Below the pieces are notes generated by a model that was not told the DNA's origin, searched no databases, and worked only from the letters and a program-made list of their open reading frames with translations. Source: Mizuhopecten yessoensis (Eukaryota). Taken from it: 64,000 bases of DNA. The stretch is taken from assembly GCF_002113885.1 (NCBI RefSeq), contig NW_018407435.1, forward strand, positions 2,147,402 to 2,211,401, given 5' to 3'. Position numbers and translations under genes: made by a program. How positions within the stretch are numbered: the first letter of the stretch is position 1; each line of letters begins with the position of its first letter. Positions 29,337 through 54,600 of this stretch are shown one piece after another.

Positions 29337-32300
29337 TTAACACTGTTCAATGAGTCTTTGTGGCCTATTGATAGTTCTTCCTGATTTGGTTCTACCAGGC
29401 TGTATAACTGGTGCCGGTTTGACTTCATCTTCATGATCAGAAACATGGGTCTGATCTGGTTCACATCTTTCACTTTCCTGTACTTTGATTACATCATCAT
29501 CAGTTTTAACATCTGGTATCAACTTGAGATGTTTACGATTTCTACGAATCAAGTATGATCTTGGACCAACTTCGCTGACAACTGAAGCGCGATCTGACCA
29601 AGACTGTGGCTCTTGGATTCGAACCTGGTCCCCCGGTGTAAGTTTATCTTGAGACTTAACATGATTTCTACGATCATAGTAGTATTTCTGACGATTATTT
29701 TGTCCTTCACGCCACTTAATGACATCTGACATCCTGTCGACTCTCTTGACATCAACTCTAGCTTCTGGTAAGTTTGACTTGAGACGTCTACCCATCAACA
29801 GTTCAGCTGGTGATAAGCCATTGTCAAGGGGTGTGGTCCTATACACGAGTAATGCCATATGAATGTCTTGTTGACTTTCTTTACATTTTCTCATAATGTT
29901 CTTTACGGTCTGTACAGTTTTTTCTGCTAGTCCATTTGACTGTGGGTATCTGGGGCTACTGGTAACATGCTTGATATCCCATTCCTTCACAAAATCTTTA
30001 AATTCTTTACAGCTGTAACATGGACCGTTGTCACTGGTGAGTACTTGTGGTACACCATGGCGCGAGAATATGCTTTTTAAAGCATTGATTACAGATGTTG
30101 CAGTCTGATTAGGTAGCAACAGAACCTCCGGGTAGTTTGAGAAACTGTCACATGTCACAATGTAGTCTTTGCCTTCTAATGAGAACAAATCTGTTGACAC
30201 ATGTTCCCATGCTGATTTGGATACTGGTGTAGGGTTCAGTGGTTCTGCTTGCTGTTTCATCGCAAATTTCTGACACACATCACAGTTCTCAACCATGCTG
30301 TTTATCTCAAAGTTCATGTTGGGCCAGAACAGCAGTTCACTTGCACGTTTCTTGCACTTTTCTCTTCCAAGATGTCCATGATGTATTTTCTTCAGCATCT
30401 CACTTCGAAGTTTCAGCGGAATAACTATACGAGTTCCTTTGAATACAAGTCCATTAATCACTGTGAGTTCCTCACGGAAGTTCCAATAGGGAAACATATC
30501 AGACGTACAGTCATGTCTCTCATCAGGCCAATCATCAACTATCACTCTAGCCAATCTGTTCATAGTTCCATCTTGTTGTGTGGCTCTGCGTATTTCATCC
30601 AGTTTCGCATCCGTTACTGGTAATGATTTGTAGATGCAATCAACATACATTTCTACGTCATGGTTCATAGCTTTTGTTGAATCATCATGATCATCATTGA
30701 CTGAAGCTCTGGAGAGAGTGTCTGCAGTATACATATATCTGCCAGGAGTATGTGATAATCGAAAGTCATACTTCTGAAGCCTTAATCTCATCCTCTGTAT
30801 CCTTGGCGGACATCCATTAAACGCCTTTGCAAATATAGCGACTAGTGGCTTGTGGTCTGTTTCAACCTCAAATGTAGTACCGTAAACGTACTGATGAAAG
30901 CGCTCGCACGCAAAAGTTAAGGCTAATGCTTCGCGTTCTATTGTAGCGTATCTGCTTTCACACTCGGTGACTGTCCTTGAAGCATAAGCAACAGGTAACC
31001 ATTCACTGTCATGTTTTTGAAGTAAGACTGCCCCTAGACCTGTCTGGCTTGCATCAGCTGATACTCGGATTTCTTTTGTAGGATCATAGAATTTCAGCAC
31101 AGGCTCATTAGAGACTAAAGTTTTCAGCTCCTCAAAGGCTCTCTCCTGGGGTTGTTCCCATATCCATGCATTGTCTTTAACCAGTAATTTTCTGAGTGGT
31201 ACAGCTCTGCTGGATAGGTCTGGTACAAATCTTGCTAGATAATTAATCATACCAAGAAATCTCTGTAGTGATTTTTTGTCATCAGGCCTCTATATCTCGA
31301 CAATCGCAGTAACTTTCTTGTTGTCGGGCTTGATTCCTTCTGATGTTATAGTGTCACCCAGGAATGTTAGTTCTTGTACTCCAATCACACTCTTGTCAGG
31401 GTTGAGTTTGAGGTTCGATTCCCTCGCTACTTCAAGCACTTGTCTGACACGTGCAGCATGCTCCTCTACAGATGTTCCCCATATAATGATGTCATCCATG
31501 GAGGTGTCTACTCCTGAGAGATTTTCAAATAGTGTGTGTATATTTCTGTGATACATCTCTGGTGCGCATGAAATTCCAAAGGGTAACCTCTTGAACTGAT
31601 ATCTTCCAAAAGGCGTTATAAAGGTGCACAAATCTGAGCTGTCCTCATCTAGTTGTAATTGCCAAAAACCACTTGAGGCATCTAATTTTGAGAATACCTT
31701 GGCTCCAGCAAACTTAGACATAATTTCCTCCCTTGTGGGAAGTTTGAAATGTTCTCTCCTGATGTATTTGTTCAGGTTCCTTGGATCCAAGCAGAGTCTG
31801 AGTTTTCCATTGGGTTTGGGTACAATAACCAAAGCGCTGACCCATTCCGTAGGTTTTTCTACCTTTTCTATAACTTTCATCTCTACCATTTGATCCAGTT
31901 CCTTTTTTACTTGATCATGCTGCGCGAAAGGTAGTTTTCTACATGAATCAATTGTTGGCTCTGAATTAGGTTGAAGTTTAATCGAAACCTTTCCAGGTAG
32001 ACAACCTAATCCTTGAAATACATCTGAGTAGTCTTCTTCAATGCTCTCCTTACTGAGTTGCTCTACTTTCACTTTCGGTTTCTGTATGTGATCAGTATTC
32101 ACAATACTTTGTTTCCTTTCTACCGAGAGTACTAATTTAACCAGTCCCATAGCCTCACTGCTCTTTCTTCCAATGATGGGCTTGACATTTCCTGGACACA
32201 CAATGAATAGGACTTTATATTTCTTGTTTTTATGCTTCACTTCGCACACACATTGTCCTACAGCCTCTATCTGTCCTGCGTTGTATGCCGTTAGTTTCAC

Positions 32301-33323
32301 TTTCGTTTTGTGGATCCTTGGCTTATTTCGAAGTTTATCAAATTCTTCTTTTGGAATAATGTTGACATCGGATCCAGTGTCAATCTTCAGAGGTATCAAG
32401 TTTCCATGAACTTCTAGTGGTGCTAGCCACACATTTGATGTGACATATTCAACAGAGTCTATAAATAGCTCATGCTCATAATTCTCCACTGCATGTACTT
32501 GCTGAGTTGTCTTGTCTGTAGCTTTTTTCTGTTTAGACTTACAGGCTTTCGCAAAATGGTTTCTTTTCCCACATAATCGACACGTTTGACCTCTCGCTGG
32601 ACATAAGTTTCCTCTATGTACCATCGCACAGTAAGAACACGTGGTTGATCTTGACTTCTGTCCATCTGTATGCTCGGTATTTACCTTTCGAGACGACCCC
32701 CGACCAGAATTTCTACCGGTTCCTCTAGATCTCGATTTACCTCTCGATCTGATGTAGTCAACGTCCTGTTCTTTATTTTCAGTTAGGGCTAATGTTTTCA
32801 TGTGTTTCTCTGTCATGGATGCTGCTTTACACAAATCAATGCATTTTTGAAGACTCAGGTCACCTTCACGTAATAACCTCGCTCGAAGTCCATCATTCCG
32901 GATTCCTTCAACAATTTTGTCTCTTAAAATGCCATCTTTCAATTCACCAAATTCACAGTTCTTTTGCAAAATTCTCAAATCTGTTAGAAACTCGTCGAAT
33001 GTTTCATCACTCTTCTGCGCTCTCGAGTTAAACACGTGGCGCTCGTAAGTTACGTTTTTCTTCGGTGAACAATAATTCGTAAATTTTTCTATGAGAGACG
33101 CTATTTTGTCCTGTTCATTTGCTTCAAATGTCATCGTATTAAAAATTTCAACAGCTGTCTCACCTGCCAGGGTTAGAAACATTGCACACTGTTTCTTTTC
33201 CGTCAGCTCATCTCCCGCAGTAGCGGTCATGTACAGTCTGTACTGTTGTAGCCATCTTCTCCAGTTCTCCGATACGTTGCCATCAAATGACAGACTCTTC
33301 GGCGTTGGTAGTTTGTTGTCCAT
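29337..33323 (-). pseudogene. Single gag-pol ORF (Gag, two CCHC-type knuckles, protease, RT, RNase H, integrase) interrupted by one in-frame TAG at 31290-31292
   Basis: CRLCGKRNHFAKAC, LKIDTGS, KLDASSGFWQ, LPFG, SMDD, ADAS..GLGAVL, TDHKPL, HHCC and DDE integrase motifs; AIVEI*RPDDKKSLQRFLGMINY reads in one frame (13 codons between the stop and the ATG at 31250). Confidence 0.95.
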
Positions 33324-37010: not shown

Positions 37011-38021
37011 TTAAACTTCAAACCGTATCACCTTGTTATTTGTACTGAGGGGGTCTTTCACACAGGAATTTGACACTGAGTAGATACAAGGCTGCCCCAT
37101 GTCCAGCAATGACCTCACTGTCCATTGCAAGGTGGCGTGTGCCTCAGGGGGTCTGTAACTAGTGGGGGAGAGGGATCAGAAGACAAGTCCACAGGTGTCC
37201 ATCAAGCGTGCTCACACTCGAGCATAAATAAATTATCACCGGGTCCTCTTAACATGTTCAATAGGTGATTAACTTGAGGAAACAACCGTAAGACTTGAAA
37301 AACAAACACTTGATACGGCTATTATGAATTTATTTACTCACATATGATTGCATTTGACAACGCTGAAACAGCGTGTGTATTAAGTGATTGATGGTCGCCA
37401 TTTTGGATTGTGTACAAAAGTACAAAACGGAAAGCGGAATGAAAATCCGGATTAATTATTTTAATGGAAGAAGGGCCGAAAAAAATAAGCTGTTTTAATA
37501 TTTGAACAAATTTACTGACAAAAAGTGTTTAATAGTTTTAGAAGATATATTATTACTGCAAATTTACGCTGAACATTTTCTCTTACCATAATACATTAAT
37601 AGTAAATGTAAGATCACATTTCTCATGGATTTTTCACCCTTTATGTAGCATTAAAAACTTTTACATGTTTCCTTCTTTAAATACTTTTAACTGAGGATAA
37701 AAATGTAAAGAAAAAACCCATATGTCATATAAATTATTCAATGTACAAAACCCATATACCTTTCAATATTTATTTTTTTATCTTTTTATATAATTTCTAG
37801 ACAATTATATTGCTGAAATCATAAGGAACATATTGTTTGTTTCTTTTTTTGTTTGTTTTAAAATTCACCAAACTTGCTTATTTAAAGAGACAGAAACTAA
37901 ATATAGGGGCCATACATGATGACCTATCGTGTAAAATGACGTTTTTATGTTCATATATTGCATTGCTATCTTTGTTTTCAGGGCAAAGCATTATAAAAGT
38001 GTAATGTAGATTTCCAGCTTT

Positions 38022-38633
38022 AATAAGACCAAATACTAATAACCTTTTTTTTATTTATTTTTTATTTTTTAAATAAGACATACACCAGAGAATAAAGGGT
38101 AAATATCTGCATACACCATAGGGACCCCTCGGATAATCTCAAACTCCGGCCAAGTCTGACAAGGAAACAAAGTACTGCACCTAACGGAAGCAGAGACGTT
38201 TCCCTACTGTCGGGCTCAACCGGCAGTAAGAGACCCGAGGTACATAACAAATATAATATATATACCTCCCTATAAGAACAGGAATATATTCAATAAATAC
38301 ACTTTACAAATAGACAAATATTTTTCTTTTTTAAGTACATATATACATTAATATAAGCCACATTGGCCAATTTCGAGTCCCCTCAACGACACAAAAACAT
38401 TAGTAAAGATCAACAATCACAGATACAACATCCAGCAAGACACACCATTTCGGACCAAGGAGTCGTCTCCAAATTACACCACAAGATAAGGATAGGATAG
38501 AATAGACGACTCCAAACCACCCCCCGAGGGAAGGCAACTTCCCTCACGCCGACTGAACACTGACTTCCGTCAGTGAGATGAAACCCGTAAGGGCGGATTC
38601 ATGTAGGCGCGAAACCCGTCATCCATCCATCCA
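38022..38633 (+). mobile_element. 612-bp non-coding retro-insert with a (CCAT)n tail and two structured-RNA domains
   Basis: 10-bp TSD ttccagcttt at 38012-38021 and 38634-38643; empty site in paralogue C (~54172-54183); multiple complementary stems, two with GNRA loops. Confidence 0.8.
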
Positions 38634-40035
38634 TTCCAGCTTTCCTGTGATTATCTTGTGAAACGTAATTCTCTGATACACTGTATCAGATTGCCACAGG
38701 TACCATAAAGGACACTTACACGTAAAAACTCTTAAAACACTTAGTTGAATTATAAAAAGGACAAAGAGTCCTGTCATTTATAACTCTGGTTAAAAGCAAG
38801 TAATTACGTTAACGTGATACGCATGATCATATCATCTTTGTGACATTTCAATGTTTTCATTTTTTTTCTATACGATAGGACTGCTTCTCGACAACGGTGG
38901 GACGTATGACCAGTGTTTCATTGTCACAGGTATTGTACTATACTGCAAACAAAATTCTCCCATGTGTGCGTATGAACAGAATTGATTTAAGTAGAAGGTG
39001 TCAACAACAATCTCTATTGTGTACATGTTTTCTAAAAGGATGCAAGTAAAAGAGGAAGGTTAAGCTTTCAATTTGAGAAGAGGCATGCACTTTTTCGTTT
39101 GTTTAGAAGAAACCAAATATGACAGTGATTAGAAATAAATAAGATTTTTATAAAAACAAAATCAAAAATTAGTGTTATATAGGTCATTGTCGACAAGTTT
39201 TGTTTATATTAAATAAAATAAATCACGTATGTAATATTAATATTTTTCAGTTTTAAAATATCCATTAAATTTGTAATGCATGTATAACAAGTTTTAGGTA
39301 GGTCAAATGAAATTTGTAATATAAAGTCCTACCGCTTAGCTTAATATTTCGTTTTAATATCCCTCATTTTTGTTTTTAATATTTAAGATATCTAAGAAAG
39401 CGTTTCCCTTAATTTATAATAAATTTACAGTCATCATAAAAACAATTTTTTGTAGGATAAAAATGCATTGGAATCTGCTTTTATTTAACTACACTATATA
39501 TATTATGTTTACCAATGCTTATTACGAGTATCAGTTTAGTTTCAACAGTAATACAGTTTATCTTATGAACACATTTTCAGAGAGATGGAAACAATTGAGC
39601 TTAGAAATTTAACTTATCCCTGTTGTTATTTACATCAAGCACACGTTTTCAAAGATGACATTTGTGTGCACACAACTCTGCTCATTGTATGTGTATGTCT
39701 TTATCAGATTGTTGATACATGTTATTTCCTTGTTATATCATTATTATGCTGTTGTATCTAATTATATTTCAATAAATCTAGCTTTCTGCTTTTTACCTGA
39801 ACGTTTTCTAGATTATCTATCTGTTATGTTGATCCAAAGGTTTATGATATAAACCACCCGTCGTAATTATACCGTGTGTAATATATAACAATATCTGTAC
39901 AACTCGTAGTAATGGATATGTCTTTACATTGTGATCCAGGTACTCGTATCAGCAATAGACCATTTGTCACTATGACCATGTCCAGATTATGGGGCTGTTG
40001 ACCAGCAACATCGGAACATTCTATTTTTTTTAAGT

Positions 40036-51600: not shown

Positions 51601-54600
51601 TACAGGTGTGTTTGCTGGCCTTGTCCTCAAGAAGTACAGTTGCCGAGTAGCAACCATAGCAGGGTCATTGGTAATGACCGCGGGGTTCGTTTGCTGTGCC
51701 TTTCTGGATTCTCTAGACTTAGTCATACTGTTTTACGGAGGAATAGCGGGTACGATTTGTGACTTTATTACAGCATATCCATTACTGTACTTTGGAGTTT
51801 TTTGCAGTCAATTGCCTGGTTTAATTTTGGCACGTCAAACTTTTACGATTTCCGTTTGTTGAATATCGGTGCATTCAGATGATAACAGTTTCGAAGAGTA
51901 AATATATTGGTTTCGGTAGGTAACATTCAAGTTTTCATATAACAAGACAGACTTGGAAGAATTAGCATCAAGTCACGTTCCGGTAAGTTAATGGTTATAT
52001 ATTTCGTCATAGTTTAAAATTGCTGTAAACTTAATGAAAAGGAACACGTCCCACAATATCTAGGTAATGCAACAATATCTTTATGGCATTGTGATATTTT
52101 GGGTCAATAAATCCAGGGCCAACAAACAAAACAAAAAATCTAAAATACTCCAAGATACAGTATACAAGTACAGATAGAGCAGACGTTCACTTACATGTTC
52201 CCAATATGGATTCATTTGGCCGTACCGTTTCTTGATTATATTATGACTTGTTGAAATCAAGAGAAAGTGCGTTGAAACCTCCTGTCTATTTATGAATTGC
52301 CGAAGACTAAATACCGTTTCGAAGAATGTGCATTCACATTGAATAACTTCTATTCTGCTTAACGTATGCTGCATTCACGATAGTATGGTATGAAGACCTG
52401 TCCACATGACAATAGGTGTAAGGCCCAAGTATCGTGCAGCCGATGATACTGACAAAAGAACAGATAGGTTGATCAGATATCTGCTTACTTTGTAGGCATC
52501 GGCGCAGGTTTGACTTATACGACGGGCATTGTCGTGATTGGGTTCAACTTTGAGGAGAAGCTCAACCTGGCGAGTGGGGTAGCTCTGTCTGGAGTAGGCA
52601 TGGGAGTGCTGGGACTCTCGCCGGTCATTCAGGAAATGAGGGAAATATTTGGAAACAAGGGTTTCTTTTTCATCCTGGCTGGAATTTCTGCCCATATTTG
52701 TATATTTGGAACATTATACTTCCCATCACAATTAGAGAAAAGCAATAAAGCTACTAGAATTCAGGATATGGATTATGTGACCAATTCGGATGAGATTTGG
52801 ACAACCAGTCGAGATAATGACGTAGCATCCAGATCTCCCCAAAGAGCAGATGGCAGAACAGCTCGTCATAATCGGGAAAATCAATCCATAACTAAAATAT
52901 CTAGTGTATTCAGAAATACTCCATTGGTCATGTTATGCTTTAGTCTTTTCTTTGCCCAGTTTGGAATGTTCATAATGTTTATCAATTTGCCGAACTATGC
53001 AGTCCTGACAGGTGCTGCGCCCCTCCAAGGCGCGTTCCTTATCTCCGTGTCTGGTATATGTTCAATGACGGCGAGAATTCTCACTGGTCTGGCAACAAGT
53101 GGGAACGAGGTGGACGTCGCACTGATGCTGTTCGGAACAGTCTCAGTGATGGGTATATCAACTATTTGTTTCCCCCTCTACGGACACTATTACGAGGGAC
53201 AAGTCCTGTATGCTGTATTTTTGGGTTTATACAGTGGGAGTTGCTTCCAGTTGTTGAATGGACTGAGTTTACGACTGGTTGGGCTGCGACATCTGGATAC
53301 GGCGGTGAGCATTGAGATGTTTGCCGTTGGTCTAGGTATATTATCTGGTCCTCCATGTGCAGGTGAGTTTGTTTATAATTACGGTTAACCATAAAAATTG
53401 TATTCTATATACACAGTAGTTGTAAATTATTTTGGAGTGTATTCTGTTAAGAGTACTACAAAAAACAAGATCAAATTTAATCAGTTCCTGTGACCCTGTT
53501 CTAGCCGATTTTTTTGCATAGGAAGCTAAATGTATTGATGAGCTTATCAGCACTAGTAACAAAACCCTGCCCAAGTCCTTCAATTTCATATTTAGACAAA
53601 TTGCCGATGTGCTGTTTTGAATAACAAGATATTTATCGACCACATTGTATATATCCTCCAGAGGGGATTCCCAATTCATACTAACTTAAGACGTCGCGTT
53701 AACAATACATTGACCCCCGAAATCTCAACATTACCGATAGAGAAAGCCCTCGGGAAAACCTTCTGTTTGGCAACTTAAGAATCCTGCCCCTCCGGAGGAA
53801 ATTCCCCATCTCAACATCAAGGGGAGGTAAGAAACACAAGTATGAAAAAAATGTAACAGCTTTAAGAAAAAAATGAAAATACCTCTTCTACCTACCAGAG
53901 AGCTTACATTAGTTACGAAGTTAAGTTCTTCCGTTAAATTCCGGATCTTTCACCAAGTGGGGGAAAATGTGAAAATCTGAAATAATGATTTTTGCATTGC
54001 AACATTGTAAGAATCGTATTGTTATTGATACTGTGTGTGATCTAACACAATACACAGTGTTGTCCTTGCAACAAATAAGTCTTAGCTTTCACATTTCGCA
54101 AATTAATGTTACTATTGTGTAAAATGACGTTTTGTGTATTTTTATTGCACTGCTCTCTTTGTTTTCAGGGTTTTTCAACTTTCCTGTGATTATCTTATGA
54201 AACGTAATGCTCTTATTAAATAGCTACAGGTAACATAAGGGACACTTACAAGTAATAGCTTTCTGAAAACACCGAGTTAAATTACAAAAAGGATAAAGAG
54301 TGACGTACCTGTCATTTATTACTCTGGTTAAACGCATGAAGGAAGTTATTACGGTAACTTGATCAGTATAAACGTATCAACATTGTGACATTTTAATGTT
54401 TTCATTATTTTTTTCTATACGATAGGACTGTTTCTCGACAATGGTGGGACGTATGACCAGTGTTTCATTGTCACAGGTATTGTACTATACTGCAAACAAA
54501 ATTCTCCCATGTGTGTGTATGAACAGAATTGATTTAAGTAGAAGGTGTCAACAACAATCTCTATTGTGTACATGTTTTCTAAAGGGATGCAAGTAAAAGA

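What the first reader, a model, noticed from the sequence alone, without database searches (positions are those of the whole stretch)
38022..38633. Retro-inserted non-coding element carrying two compact, heavily base-paired RNA domains (candidate novel structured RNA or ribozyme)
Seen: a 612-bp insert flanked by a 10-bp TSD (ttccagcttt), ending in catccatccatcca, and missing from the paralogous site in C. Two GC-rich islands stand out in AT-rich DNA. Domain 1 (38127-38240) has cctcgg/ccgagg and tctc/gaga closing a junction that holds ggaaac/gtttcc with inner ctgc/gcag across an aaagta/agac internal loop, and tactgtcgg-gctcaa-ccggcagta (one G-U pair). Domain 2 (38459-38609) has ggagtcgtct/agacgactcc (10 bp), gagggaag-GCAA-cttccctc, and a three-way junction of cgcc.ac/gt.ggcg, cactgac-ttcc-gtcagtg and atgaa/ttcat enclosing ccc-GTAA-ggg. 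The GNRA loops and the G-U pair favour folding of plus-strand RNA, the same polarity as the tail. Established: a TSD plus a microsatellite tail indicates target-primed reverse transcription, and non-LTR elements often carry ribozymes or RT-recognition structures. Inference: this is an uncharacterised structured 3' UTR or SINE-like RNA. I could not match it to hammerhead, HDV-like, twister or SECIS consensus by eye.
Basis: partly seen in the sequence, partly recalled or inferred. Interest (0 to 1): 0.8.

Follow-up and report, generated by a model that had tools for sequence, protein, structure and literature searches.

The report
Truncated copy of non-coding scallop retroposon
The 612-bp insert is a real but ordinary 5'-truncated copy of a repeated, about 2.2-kb non-coding retrotransposon whose folded, GC-rich 3' end most likely serves as the handle for a LINE reverse transcriptase; nothing supports a ribozyme.

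Summary
Window 38022-38633 is a 612-bp insert with a 10-bp target-site duplication and a (CATC)n tail. It is absent from the paralogous site at 54173-54182.

The insert is not a whole element. It is the 3' 612 nt of a family whose longest TSD-flanked copy is 2,229 bp. That copy has no ORF over 107 aa, no tRNA-like head and no Rfam match. Other copies are 5'-truncated at many points, which fixes the plus-strand polarity.

Both GC-rich domains fold better than shuffles (z -4.56 and -4.65). They are among the best-conserved segments of the element, together with a GC-rich segment further 5' that the window copy lacks. Copies are too alike to test covariation: one pair shows a GC/GU/AU series and the rest never vary.

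About 14 short copies begin at or within a few bases of the foot of the three-way junction. The junction plus tail (about 87 nt) therefore behaves as a separable module.

Best reading: a non-autonomous, LINE-dependent retroposon with a stringent-type 3' recognition structure. The partner LINE was not found. Hammerhead, HDV-like and other ribozyme families were not detected. Ordinary, modest interest.

The parts
38012..38021 (+). Left target-site duplication, ttccagcttt
   Evidence: Identical to 38634-38643. The paralog has one copy, tttcaacttt, at 54173-54182.
38022..38633 (+). Inserted retroposon copy. It is 5'-truncated and corresponds to about nt 1606-2226 of the 2,229-nt reference copy, at 97.3% identity.
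   Evidence: At least 474 first-look candidates in the genome.
38128..38240 (+). Domain 1: multi-helix GC-rich domain closed by cctcgg/ccgagg
   Evidence: Folding z -4.56. 29 pairs are 97% intact in 36 copies, and one pair shows GC/GU/AU. Identity is 94-97% against 81-94% for most of the element.
38459..38513 (+). Domain 2, hairpin 1: 10-bp stem ggagtcgtct/agacgactcc with a 35-nt A/G-rich loop
   Evidence: The stem has no subfamily-level variation (7 of 10 pairs never vary; 3 depart in single copies). Four of domain 2's six subfamily-level variable sites lie in the loop.
38526..38545 (+). Domain 2, hairpin 2: gagggaag-GCAA-cttccctc (8 bp, GNRA loop)
   Evidence: At least 8 short copies start 1 nt 3' of this hairpin.
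38547..38609 (+). Domain 2, three-way junction. Stem A cgccgac/gtaggcg has one G.A mismatch. Stem B is cactgac-ttcc-gtcagtg. Stem C is atgaa..ccc-GTAA-ggg..ttcat.
   Evidence: This is the most conserved part of the element (97-99% identity).
38610..38633 (+). Linker cgaaacccgt followed by the (CATC)3CA microsatellite tail
   Evidence: Tail length varies between copies. Some subfamilies carry (CAAC)n instead.
38634..38643 (+). Right target-site duplication, ttccagcttt
54173..54182 (+). Empty paralogous target site, tttcaacttt

Best explanation
Window 38022-38633 is a dead, 5'-truncated copy of a repeated non-autonomous non-LTR retroposon in what appears to be the Yesso scallop genome.

The family's longest copy is 2.23 kb. 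It is A/C-rich on the sense strand, has no coding capacity and ends in a (CATC)n or (CAAC)n microsatellite.

Inferred mechanism. The element is transcribed. A reverse transcriptase and endonuclease supplied in trans by an unidentified stringent-type LINE binds the folded 3' end, meaning the three-way junction and perhaps the two hairpins before it. The enzyme nicks a target and primes cDNA synthesis on the microsatellite tail. It often stops early, which gives 5'-truncated copies such as this one, flanked by a 10-bp duplication.

Shown: the insertion signature, the family and its truncation series, the lack of any ORF, folding better than shuffles, and the relative conservation of the GC-rich domains.

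Inferred: that domain 2 is the reverse-transcriptase recognition element. Domain 1's role is also inferred. It is a conserved internal RNA module about 400 nt from the 3' end, perhaps serving RNP assembly or RNA stability, and nothing here tests that.
For: Insertion signature:
- TSD, tail and empty paralogous site.
- Eight other copies carry their own TSDs of 10-16 bp, four with one mismatch. The 2,229-bp copy is flanked by GCAATTGGACAC.

Family:
- At least 474 first-look candidates. The 40 scored are 87-100% identical and nearly all reach the 3' end while losing the 5' end at different points.
- 5' ends fall at nt 1, 9, 138, 325, 468, 525, 773 ... 1607 ... 1759 of the 2,229-nt reference.
- No ORF over 107 aa on either strand. 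No tRNA. No Rfam match at E up to 10.

Structure:
- Folding z -4.56 and -4.65. Domain 2 is strand-specific, with z -2.46 on the minus strand.
- Pairs are intact in 97-98% of cells.
- The GC-rich domains are 94-99% identical, against 81-94% for most of the rest of the element.
- 11 of the 16 subfamily-level variable sites fall in unpaired positions. Two of the five paired ones form the GC/GU/AU pair.

Separable module:
- Of 16 junction copies with foreign upstream sequence, about 8 begin exactly at ACGCCGAC and about 6 more within a few bases. For comparison, 57 hits carry TT at the two probed upstream positions, about 53 of them with the family's own upstream sequence.

Precedent:
- Stringent-type LINEs and their non-autonomous partners are recognised through a 3' stem-loop next to tandem repeats (PMC1636434, PMC4176376).
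- Scallops are known to carry SINE-like elements without a pol III head (PMC4758252).
Against: - No partner LINE sharing the tail was found. No other family in 259 kb of held sequence matches a covariance model of the junction. A variant 5' segment holds only 68-164 aa open frames.
- There is no statistical covariation. Shuffles reach the observed score in 148 of 500 (domain 1) and 43 of 500 (domain 2) trials. The alifold covariation term is +0.47.
- Variable sites are not significantly depleted in stems (Fisher p = 0.13).
- Domain 1 folds equally well on the minus strand.
- Transcription is not shown. Only contigs from RNA libraries hold the element, and these also cover unique flanks.
Confidence: 0.75

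Rival explanations
1. The insert derives from the long 3' UTR of an autonomous LINE. The 2.2-kb copies would then be truncated LINEs, and the structured domains would be that LINE's own recognition signal.
For: The truncation series and the microsatellite tail are LINE-like. Some copies carry 455-bp tandem 5' monomers, as some LINE promoters do. In two contigs the 5' region lies 4.7 kb and more than 7 kb upstream of the 3' part.
Against: The 2,229-bp copy has its own 12-bp TSD. Independent copies end within 9 nt of the same 5' end. There is no ORF over 107 aa. The variant 5' segment has open frames of only 68-164 aa and no Pfam match.
Confidence: 0.12
2. One of the domains is a new self-cleaving or cell-processed RNA. 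Cleavage at its 5' edge would produce the discrete 5' ends seen at ACGCCGAC, and at CAGTCCGG further upstream.
For: Starts are sharp. About 8 of 16 foreign-upstream junction copies start at the same base, and 6 of 6 start at (A)CAGTCCGG. The folds are compact, with GNRA loops.
Against: No hammerhead, HDV-like, twister, pistol or hatchet match at E up to 10, even with short inputs. The junction strands A/UGAA, AG and none do not fit the hammerhead core. The topology is a plain three-way junction without the nested pseudoknot of HDV-like ribozymes. The start at ACGCCGAC lies 1 nt 3' of an 8-bp GC-rich GNRA hairpin, where a reverse transcriptase would be expected to stall. CAGTCC resembles an initiator element (my own knowledge).
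Confidence: 0.05
3. The helices carry no function. The GC-rich islands look conserved only because AT-rich low-complexity parts align poorly and the family is young.
For: No significant covariation. Fisher p = 0.13. Divergence peaks in segments with 10-30% GC and many indels. Domain 1 folds equally well on both strands.
Against: z-scores of about -4.6 for two separate domains. The domains stay nearly invariant in copies that are only 77-88% identical overall. The three-way junction recurs as a separable unit.
Confidence: 0.08

Closest known systems
3' tails of stringent-type LINEs and their non-autonomous partners, such as eel UnaL2/UnaSINE1 and zebrafish ZfL2 (PMC1636434, PMC4176376)
   Same: Folded RNA directly upstream of a short tandem repeat at the 3' end. 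Insertion with variable TSDs and 5' truncation. The 3' module behaves as a separable unit.
   Different: Here the module is a three-way junction preceded by two hairpins (about 175 nt), not a single stem-loop. The tail repeat is (CATC)n or (CAAC)n. No LINE sharing the module was found, and binding was not tested.
[quoted passage not shown]
   Same: Scallop retroposons that lack a working pol III-type head. They have variable TSDs and terminal tandem repeats and are thought to be mobilised by an unidentified LINE.
   Different: Those elements are about 520 bp and carry a tRNA remnant and the MESC domain. This family reaches 2.2 kb, has no tRNA-like part and has 455-bp 5' monomers in some copies. 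Sequence homology could not be tested because no published consensus was available to the tools.
Short internally deleted elements (SIDEs) and other ORF-less LINE derivatives (concept cited in PMC11481361)
   Same: Long, non-coding, LINE-like in strand composition, truncation pattern and tail.
   Different: A SIDE is defined by its parent LINE, and none was identified here.
Ribozymes carried by retrotransposons: hammerheads of Penelope-like elements, and HDV-like ribozymes at the 5' ends of R2, RTE and I/Nimb elements
   Same: Compact GC-rich folds inside a retroelement, and discrete RNA-like 5' ends in some copies.
   Different: No Rfam match. The conserved cores are absent and the topology differs.

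Membership tests
Non-LTR retroposon inserted by target-primed reverse transcription | Target-site duplication of variable length flanking each copy | tested here: met
   10 bp in the window. 10-16 bp at eight other copies, four of them with one mismatch. 12 bp at the 2,229-bp copy.
Non-LTR retroposon inserted by target-primed reverse transcription | Fixed 3' end with a simple-repeat tail and variable 5' truncation | tested here: met
Non-LTR retroposon inserted by target-primed reverse transcription | Empty site available for comparison | tested here: met
   Paralog at 54173-54182
Non-autonomous element (no coding capacity of its own) | No RT or endonuclease ORF in full-length copies | tested here: met
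   No ORF over 107 aa in 2,229 bp
Stringent-type LINE/SINE pair | 3' tail sequence shared with an autonomous LINE of the same genome | tested here: inconclusive
   No such LINE turned up.
Stringent-type LINE/SINE pair | 3' stem-loop needed for retrotransposition | not testable with these tools
   Needs a retrotransposition assay
Canonical SINE | Head derived from tRNA, 5S or 7SL RNA with a pol III promoter, and length of about 100-700 bp | tested here: not met
   No tRNA. No Rfam hit. Full length is 2.2 kb.
LP-SINE (PMC4758252) | First ~70 nt homologous to the 5' end of Nimb/I-clade LINE 5' UTRs | not testable with these tools
   No published consensus is held. Six copies do start at an initiator-like (A)CAGTCCGG.
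Hammerhead ribozyme | Three helices around the CUGANGA / GAAA / UH core | tested here: not met
   No Rfam hammerhead match at E up to 10. The junction strands read A/UGAA, AG and none.
HDV-like ribozyme | Nested double pseudoknot (P1-P2-P3-P1.1-P4) with cleavage at its 5' edge | tested here: not met
   No Rfam match. The 3' module is an unknotted three-way junction. In the head I could not place a P1 partner by eye.
Conserved structured RNA (general) | Compensatory base changes across diverged homologs | tested here: inconclusive
   Of 68 pairs, one shows GC/GU/AU. No measure exceeds the shuffles. The copies are too similar.

The most novel reading that the evidence does not exclude
The hairpin pair plus three-way junction (and perhaps domain 1) could be a new kind of retrotransposition signal. 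In this reading the ~87-nt junction-plus-tail is the minimal mobile unit. The sharp 5' ends at ACGCCGAC and CAGTCCGG would reflect RNA processing or internal initiation, not reverse-transcriptase stalling.
Probability: 0.12. Interest if true: 0.55.

Novelty: new member of a known kind. Interest (0 to 1): 0.3.

Why it matters
The main value is for annotation. The insert should be masked as a repeat and not chased as a gene or a ribozyme.

The family itself is a reasonable system for asking how a LINE enzyme picks its RNA in molluscs, where SINE-LINE partnerships are only partly mapped (PMC11481361). It is long and ORF-less, its tail is folded, some copies carry 5' monomers, and its 5' ends are discrete.

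If the three-way junction proves to be the recognition element, it would extend the known repertoire beyond single stem-loops.

Tried and rejected
- **Rfam scans.** Five runs at E up to 10 covered the region, the whole 2.2-kb element and each domain alone. They returned only noise, such as miRNA and snoRNA models at 10-23 bits.
- **ARAGORN.** No tRNA.
- **My early reading of a ~0.99-kb unit.** I first took this as the full element. That was wrong, because homology runs 1.24 kb further 5'.
- **Partner LINE.** Six routes failed:
  - the tail-only search returned only near-identical family copies;
  - there are no other (CATC)n tails in the held sequence;
  - a genome census of (CATC)4 was swamped by microsatellite arrays and no commoner than the control;
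  - a variant 5' segment has 9 copies and only short open frames;
  - that segment has no Pfam match;
  - the covariance model R1 found only family copies.
- **Metagenome scans for cross-species relatives.** These gave 0 hits and then 4 chance 20-mer matches in GC-rich contigs.
- **Depth in laid contigs.** The 3' 120 nt appeared 10-100 times commoner. Exact-pattern counts, 88 for a tail 22-mer, do not bear that out. I treat the depth as an artefact of collapsed identical unitigs.
- **Tail pairing.** The energy minimum pairs the tail with the GGAUAGGAUAG loop of hairpin 1. Subfamilies with (CAAC)n tails keep the same loop, so the pairing is probably spurious.
- **Limits.** Later pattern searches returned matched strings of at most 35 bases. 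No contig looked human and no N stretch was filled.

Full report
**The observation**

The left copy of ttccagcttt lies at 38012-38021, the insert runs from 38022 to 38633 (612 bp) and ends in catccatccatcca, and the right copy lies at 38634-38643.

The window holds a paralogous segment that is 86% identical over 822 bp on the right flank. There the site is empty...ttttcagggt tttcaacttt cctgtga..., with the target at 54173-54182. The insertion therefore came after the duplication. The filled site also has about 27 extra bases left of the TSD (37984-38010), which I take as an unrelated indel.

Both domains fold much better than dinucleotide shuffles:
- Domain 1: -46.9 kcal/mol, z -4.56.
- Domain 2: -56.9 kcal/mol, z -4.65.
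- On the minus strand, domain 1 does about as well (z -4.24) and domain 2 clearly worse (z -2.46).

**What the insert is**

The assembly has 987.6 Mb in 82,659 contigs. From memory this fits the Yesso scallop, and notes from other agents in this scan name that species.

A search of the assembly gave at least 474 candidates. The 40 that were scored are 87-100% identical. Nearly all reach the 3' end of the query and lose the 5' end at different points. That is the signature of target-primed reverse transcription, and it confirms that the plus strand is the RNA sense.

Most copies continue 5' of the window copy. I first took a unit of about 0.99 kb to be the whole element. That was wrong. Comparing 10-kb loci shows homology for 2,229 bp in the longest copy (L031, minus strand, 74-2302). 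That copy is flanked by a 12-bp duplication, GCAATTGGACAC. Other copies start at reference nt 9, 138, 325, 468, 525, 773, 801, 1005, 1145 and so on, up to 1759. The window copy starts at about nt 1606. One copy has an inverted 5' piece.

A search with the first 353 nt gave 90 candidates, most of which start at query nt 1, so the 5' end is real. In several places the first 160-210 nt recur at 440-460-bp spacing. One held locus shows a 455-bp tandem unit repeated 2.2 times at 91% identity.

The 2.2-kb element has no ORF longer than 107 aa on either strand. It has no tRNA-like region and no Rfam match at E up to 10.

It is thus a long, non-coding, LINE-dependent retroposon. It is neither a canonical SINE nor a LINE with an ORF.

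**The two domains**

Across 45 independent copies, three GC-rich islands stand out. They are the two domains in the window and a head-like segment at reference nt 1241-1360. These are 94-99% identical to the reference. Most other 40-nt bins are 81-94% identical, although a few outside the islands also reach 95-98%. The islands stay nearly invariant in copies that are only 77-88% identical overall.

That pattern fits constraint on the master copies. Part of the contrast may come from poor alignment of low-complexity AT-rich segments.

Comparative support for the helices is weak because so little varies:
- In domain 1, 29 pairs are intact in 97.2% of cells. Only one pair varies on both sides, in steps (GC 11, GU 12, AU 4, other 1). 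The covariation score is reached by 148 of 500 shuffles.
- An alternative pairing taken from the energy minimum does no better or worse.
- In domain 2, 39 pairs are intact in 98.1% of cells. The one double change occurs in a single copy at two CpG sites, and 43 of 500 shuffles reach the observed score.
- RNAalifold gives a covariation term of +0.47.
- Of 16 sites that vary at subfamily level, 11 are unpaired. Two of the five paired ones are the GC/GU/AU pair. The depletion in stems is not significant (Fisher p = 0.13).

The structure is therefore supported by thermodynamics and by conservation, not by covariation.

**A separable 3' module and discrete 5' ends**

Exact-pattern searches of the genome print the matched bases. 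A tail 22-mer occurs 88 times. A 16-mer of stem B preceded by non-family bases occurs 16 times. In about 8 of these the homology starts exactly at ACGCCGAC, and in about 6 more it starts within a few bases. Probing TT at the two upstream positions instead gave 57 hits, about 53 with the family's own upstream sequence.

That start point lies one base 3' of the 8-bp GCAA-capped hairpin. The simplest reading is that the reverse transcriptase often stalls at this hairpin. If so, the hairpin forms in the template, and the ~87-nt junction plus tail is enough for priming and integration. RNA processing at that point is an alternative.

In the same way, all six copies with foreign sequence before the upstream head start at (A)CAGTCCGG. 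This motif resembles an initiator (my own knowledge) and may mark an internal start.

**Ribozyme and known-family tests**

Five Rfam scans at E up to 10 found no hammerhead, HDV-like, twister, pistol, hatchet or any other credible match. Two of them used short inputs that relax the filters. The junction strands (A/UGAA, AG and none) do not fit the hammerhead core. The topology is an unknotted three-way junction, unlike HDV-like ribozymes.

**Partner LINE and relatives**

I could not find a LINE that shares the tail:
- The tail-only search returned near-identical family copies.
- The held 333 kb contains no other (CATC)n tail.
- The held 259 kb searched contains no other match to a covariance model of the junction.
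- A variant 5' segment seen in about 9 copies has open frames of only 68-164 aa and no Pfam match.
- The RT ORF at window 31290-33323 has no similar tail.
- Two metagenome scans gave nothing useful.

**Expression**

Contigs from two RNA-seq libraries and other runs hold the element. They also cover unique flanks, and contigs cannot show RNA ends, so transcription is not demonstrated. The very high depth over the last 120 nt is best explained by identical unitigs collapsing, given the exact counts. Some contigs carry (CAAC)n tails, as do three of the held copies.

**Comparison with what is known**

Stringent-type LINEs and their parasites are recognised through a folded 3' tail next to tandem repeats (PMC1636434, PMC4176376). 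Scallops are already known to hold SINE-like elements without a working pol III head, mobilised by an unidentified LINE (PMC4758252). Bivalve SINEs use Nimb, CR1-Zenon, L2 and CR1 partners (PMC11481361).

This family works like those. It differs in its length, in the 5' monomers and in having a three-way junction instead of a single stem-loop. Whether it already sits in a repeat library could not be checked.

**Verdict**

It is an ordinary truncated copy of a non-autonomous retroposon with a well-folded 3' end. A ribozyme is not supported. Interest is modest.

Noticed in passing
L026:391-1365; also genome places listed (contigs C5311, C4687, C76745, C3433, C4226): The first ~200 nt of the 2.2-kb element recur as 455-bp tandem monomers (2.2 units at 91% identity in L026). 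This recalls the monomeric promoters of some LINE 5' UTRs.
   Followed up: partly
Genome places; held copies L032:9028, L023, L060: Six of six copies with foreign upstream sequence start at (A)CAGTCCGG, about 990 nt from the 3' end. This discrete 5' end suggests internal initiation or RNA processing. The ~190 nt that follow fold with z -3.16.
   Followed up: partly
Genome places: About 8 of 16 short copies start exactly at ACGCCGAC, one base 3' of the GCAA hairpin. This is either a hot spot for reverse-transcriptase stalling or a processing site.
   Followed up: partly
L034:1521-1995 relative to L034:67-847: One copy carries its 5' 475 nt in inverted orientation, as in twin priming of L1.
   Followed up: no
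window 31290-33323, minus strand: A 677-aa ORF with an RVT_1 domain at its C-terminal end (E 1.5e-22). This is an unrelated LINE fragment 5 kb upstream, and its tail is not similar to this family's.
   Followed up: partly
window 37984-38010: About 27 bases between ttttcaggg and the left TSD are absent from the paralog at 54170. Probably an indel unrelated to the insertion.
   Followed up: no
L029, L060, L067 3' ends; contigs: Some subfamilies end in (CAAC)n instead of (CATC)n, while the folded 3' module stays the same.
   Followed up: partly
L017:2059-2100 (minus strand): A copy in which a 21-nt piece of the upstream head (cccgtgtaggagggtccaac) is joined directly to the body near reference nt 1664. 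This is an internal-deletion variant.
   Followed up: no
Run X2: A run labelled as a different organism (B) holds the element and also matches the unique flank of locus L037 without any difference. It probably contains DNA of the same species.
   Followed up: no
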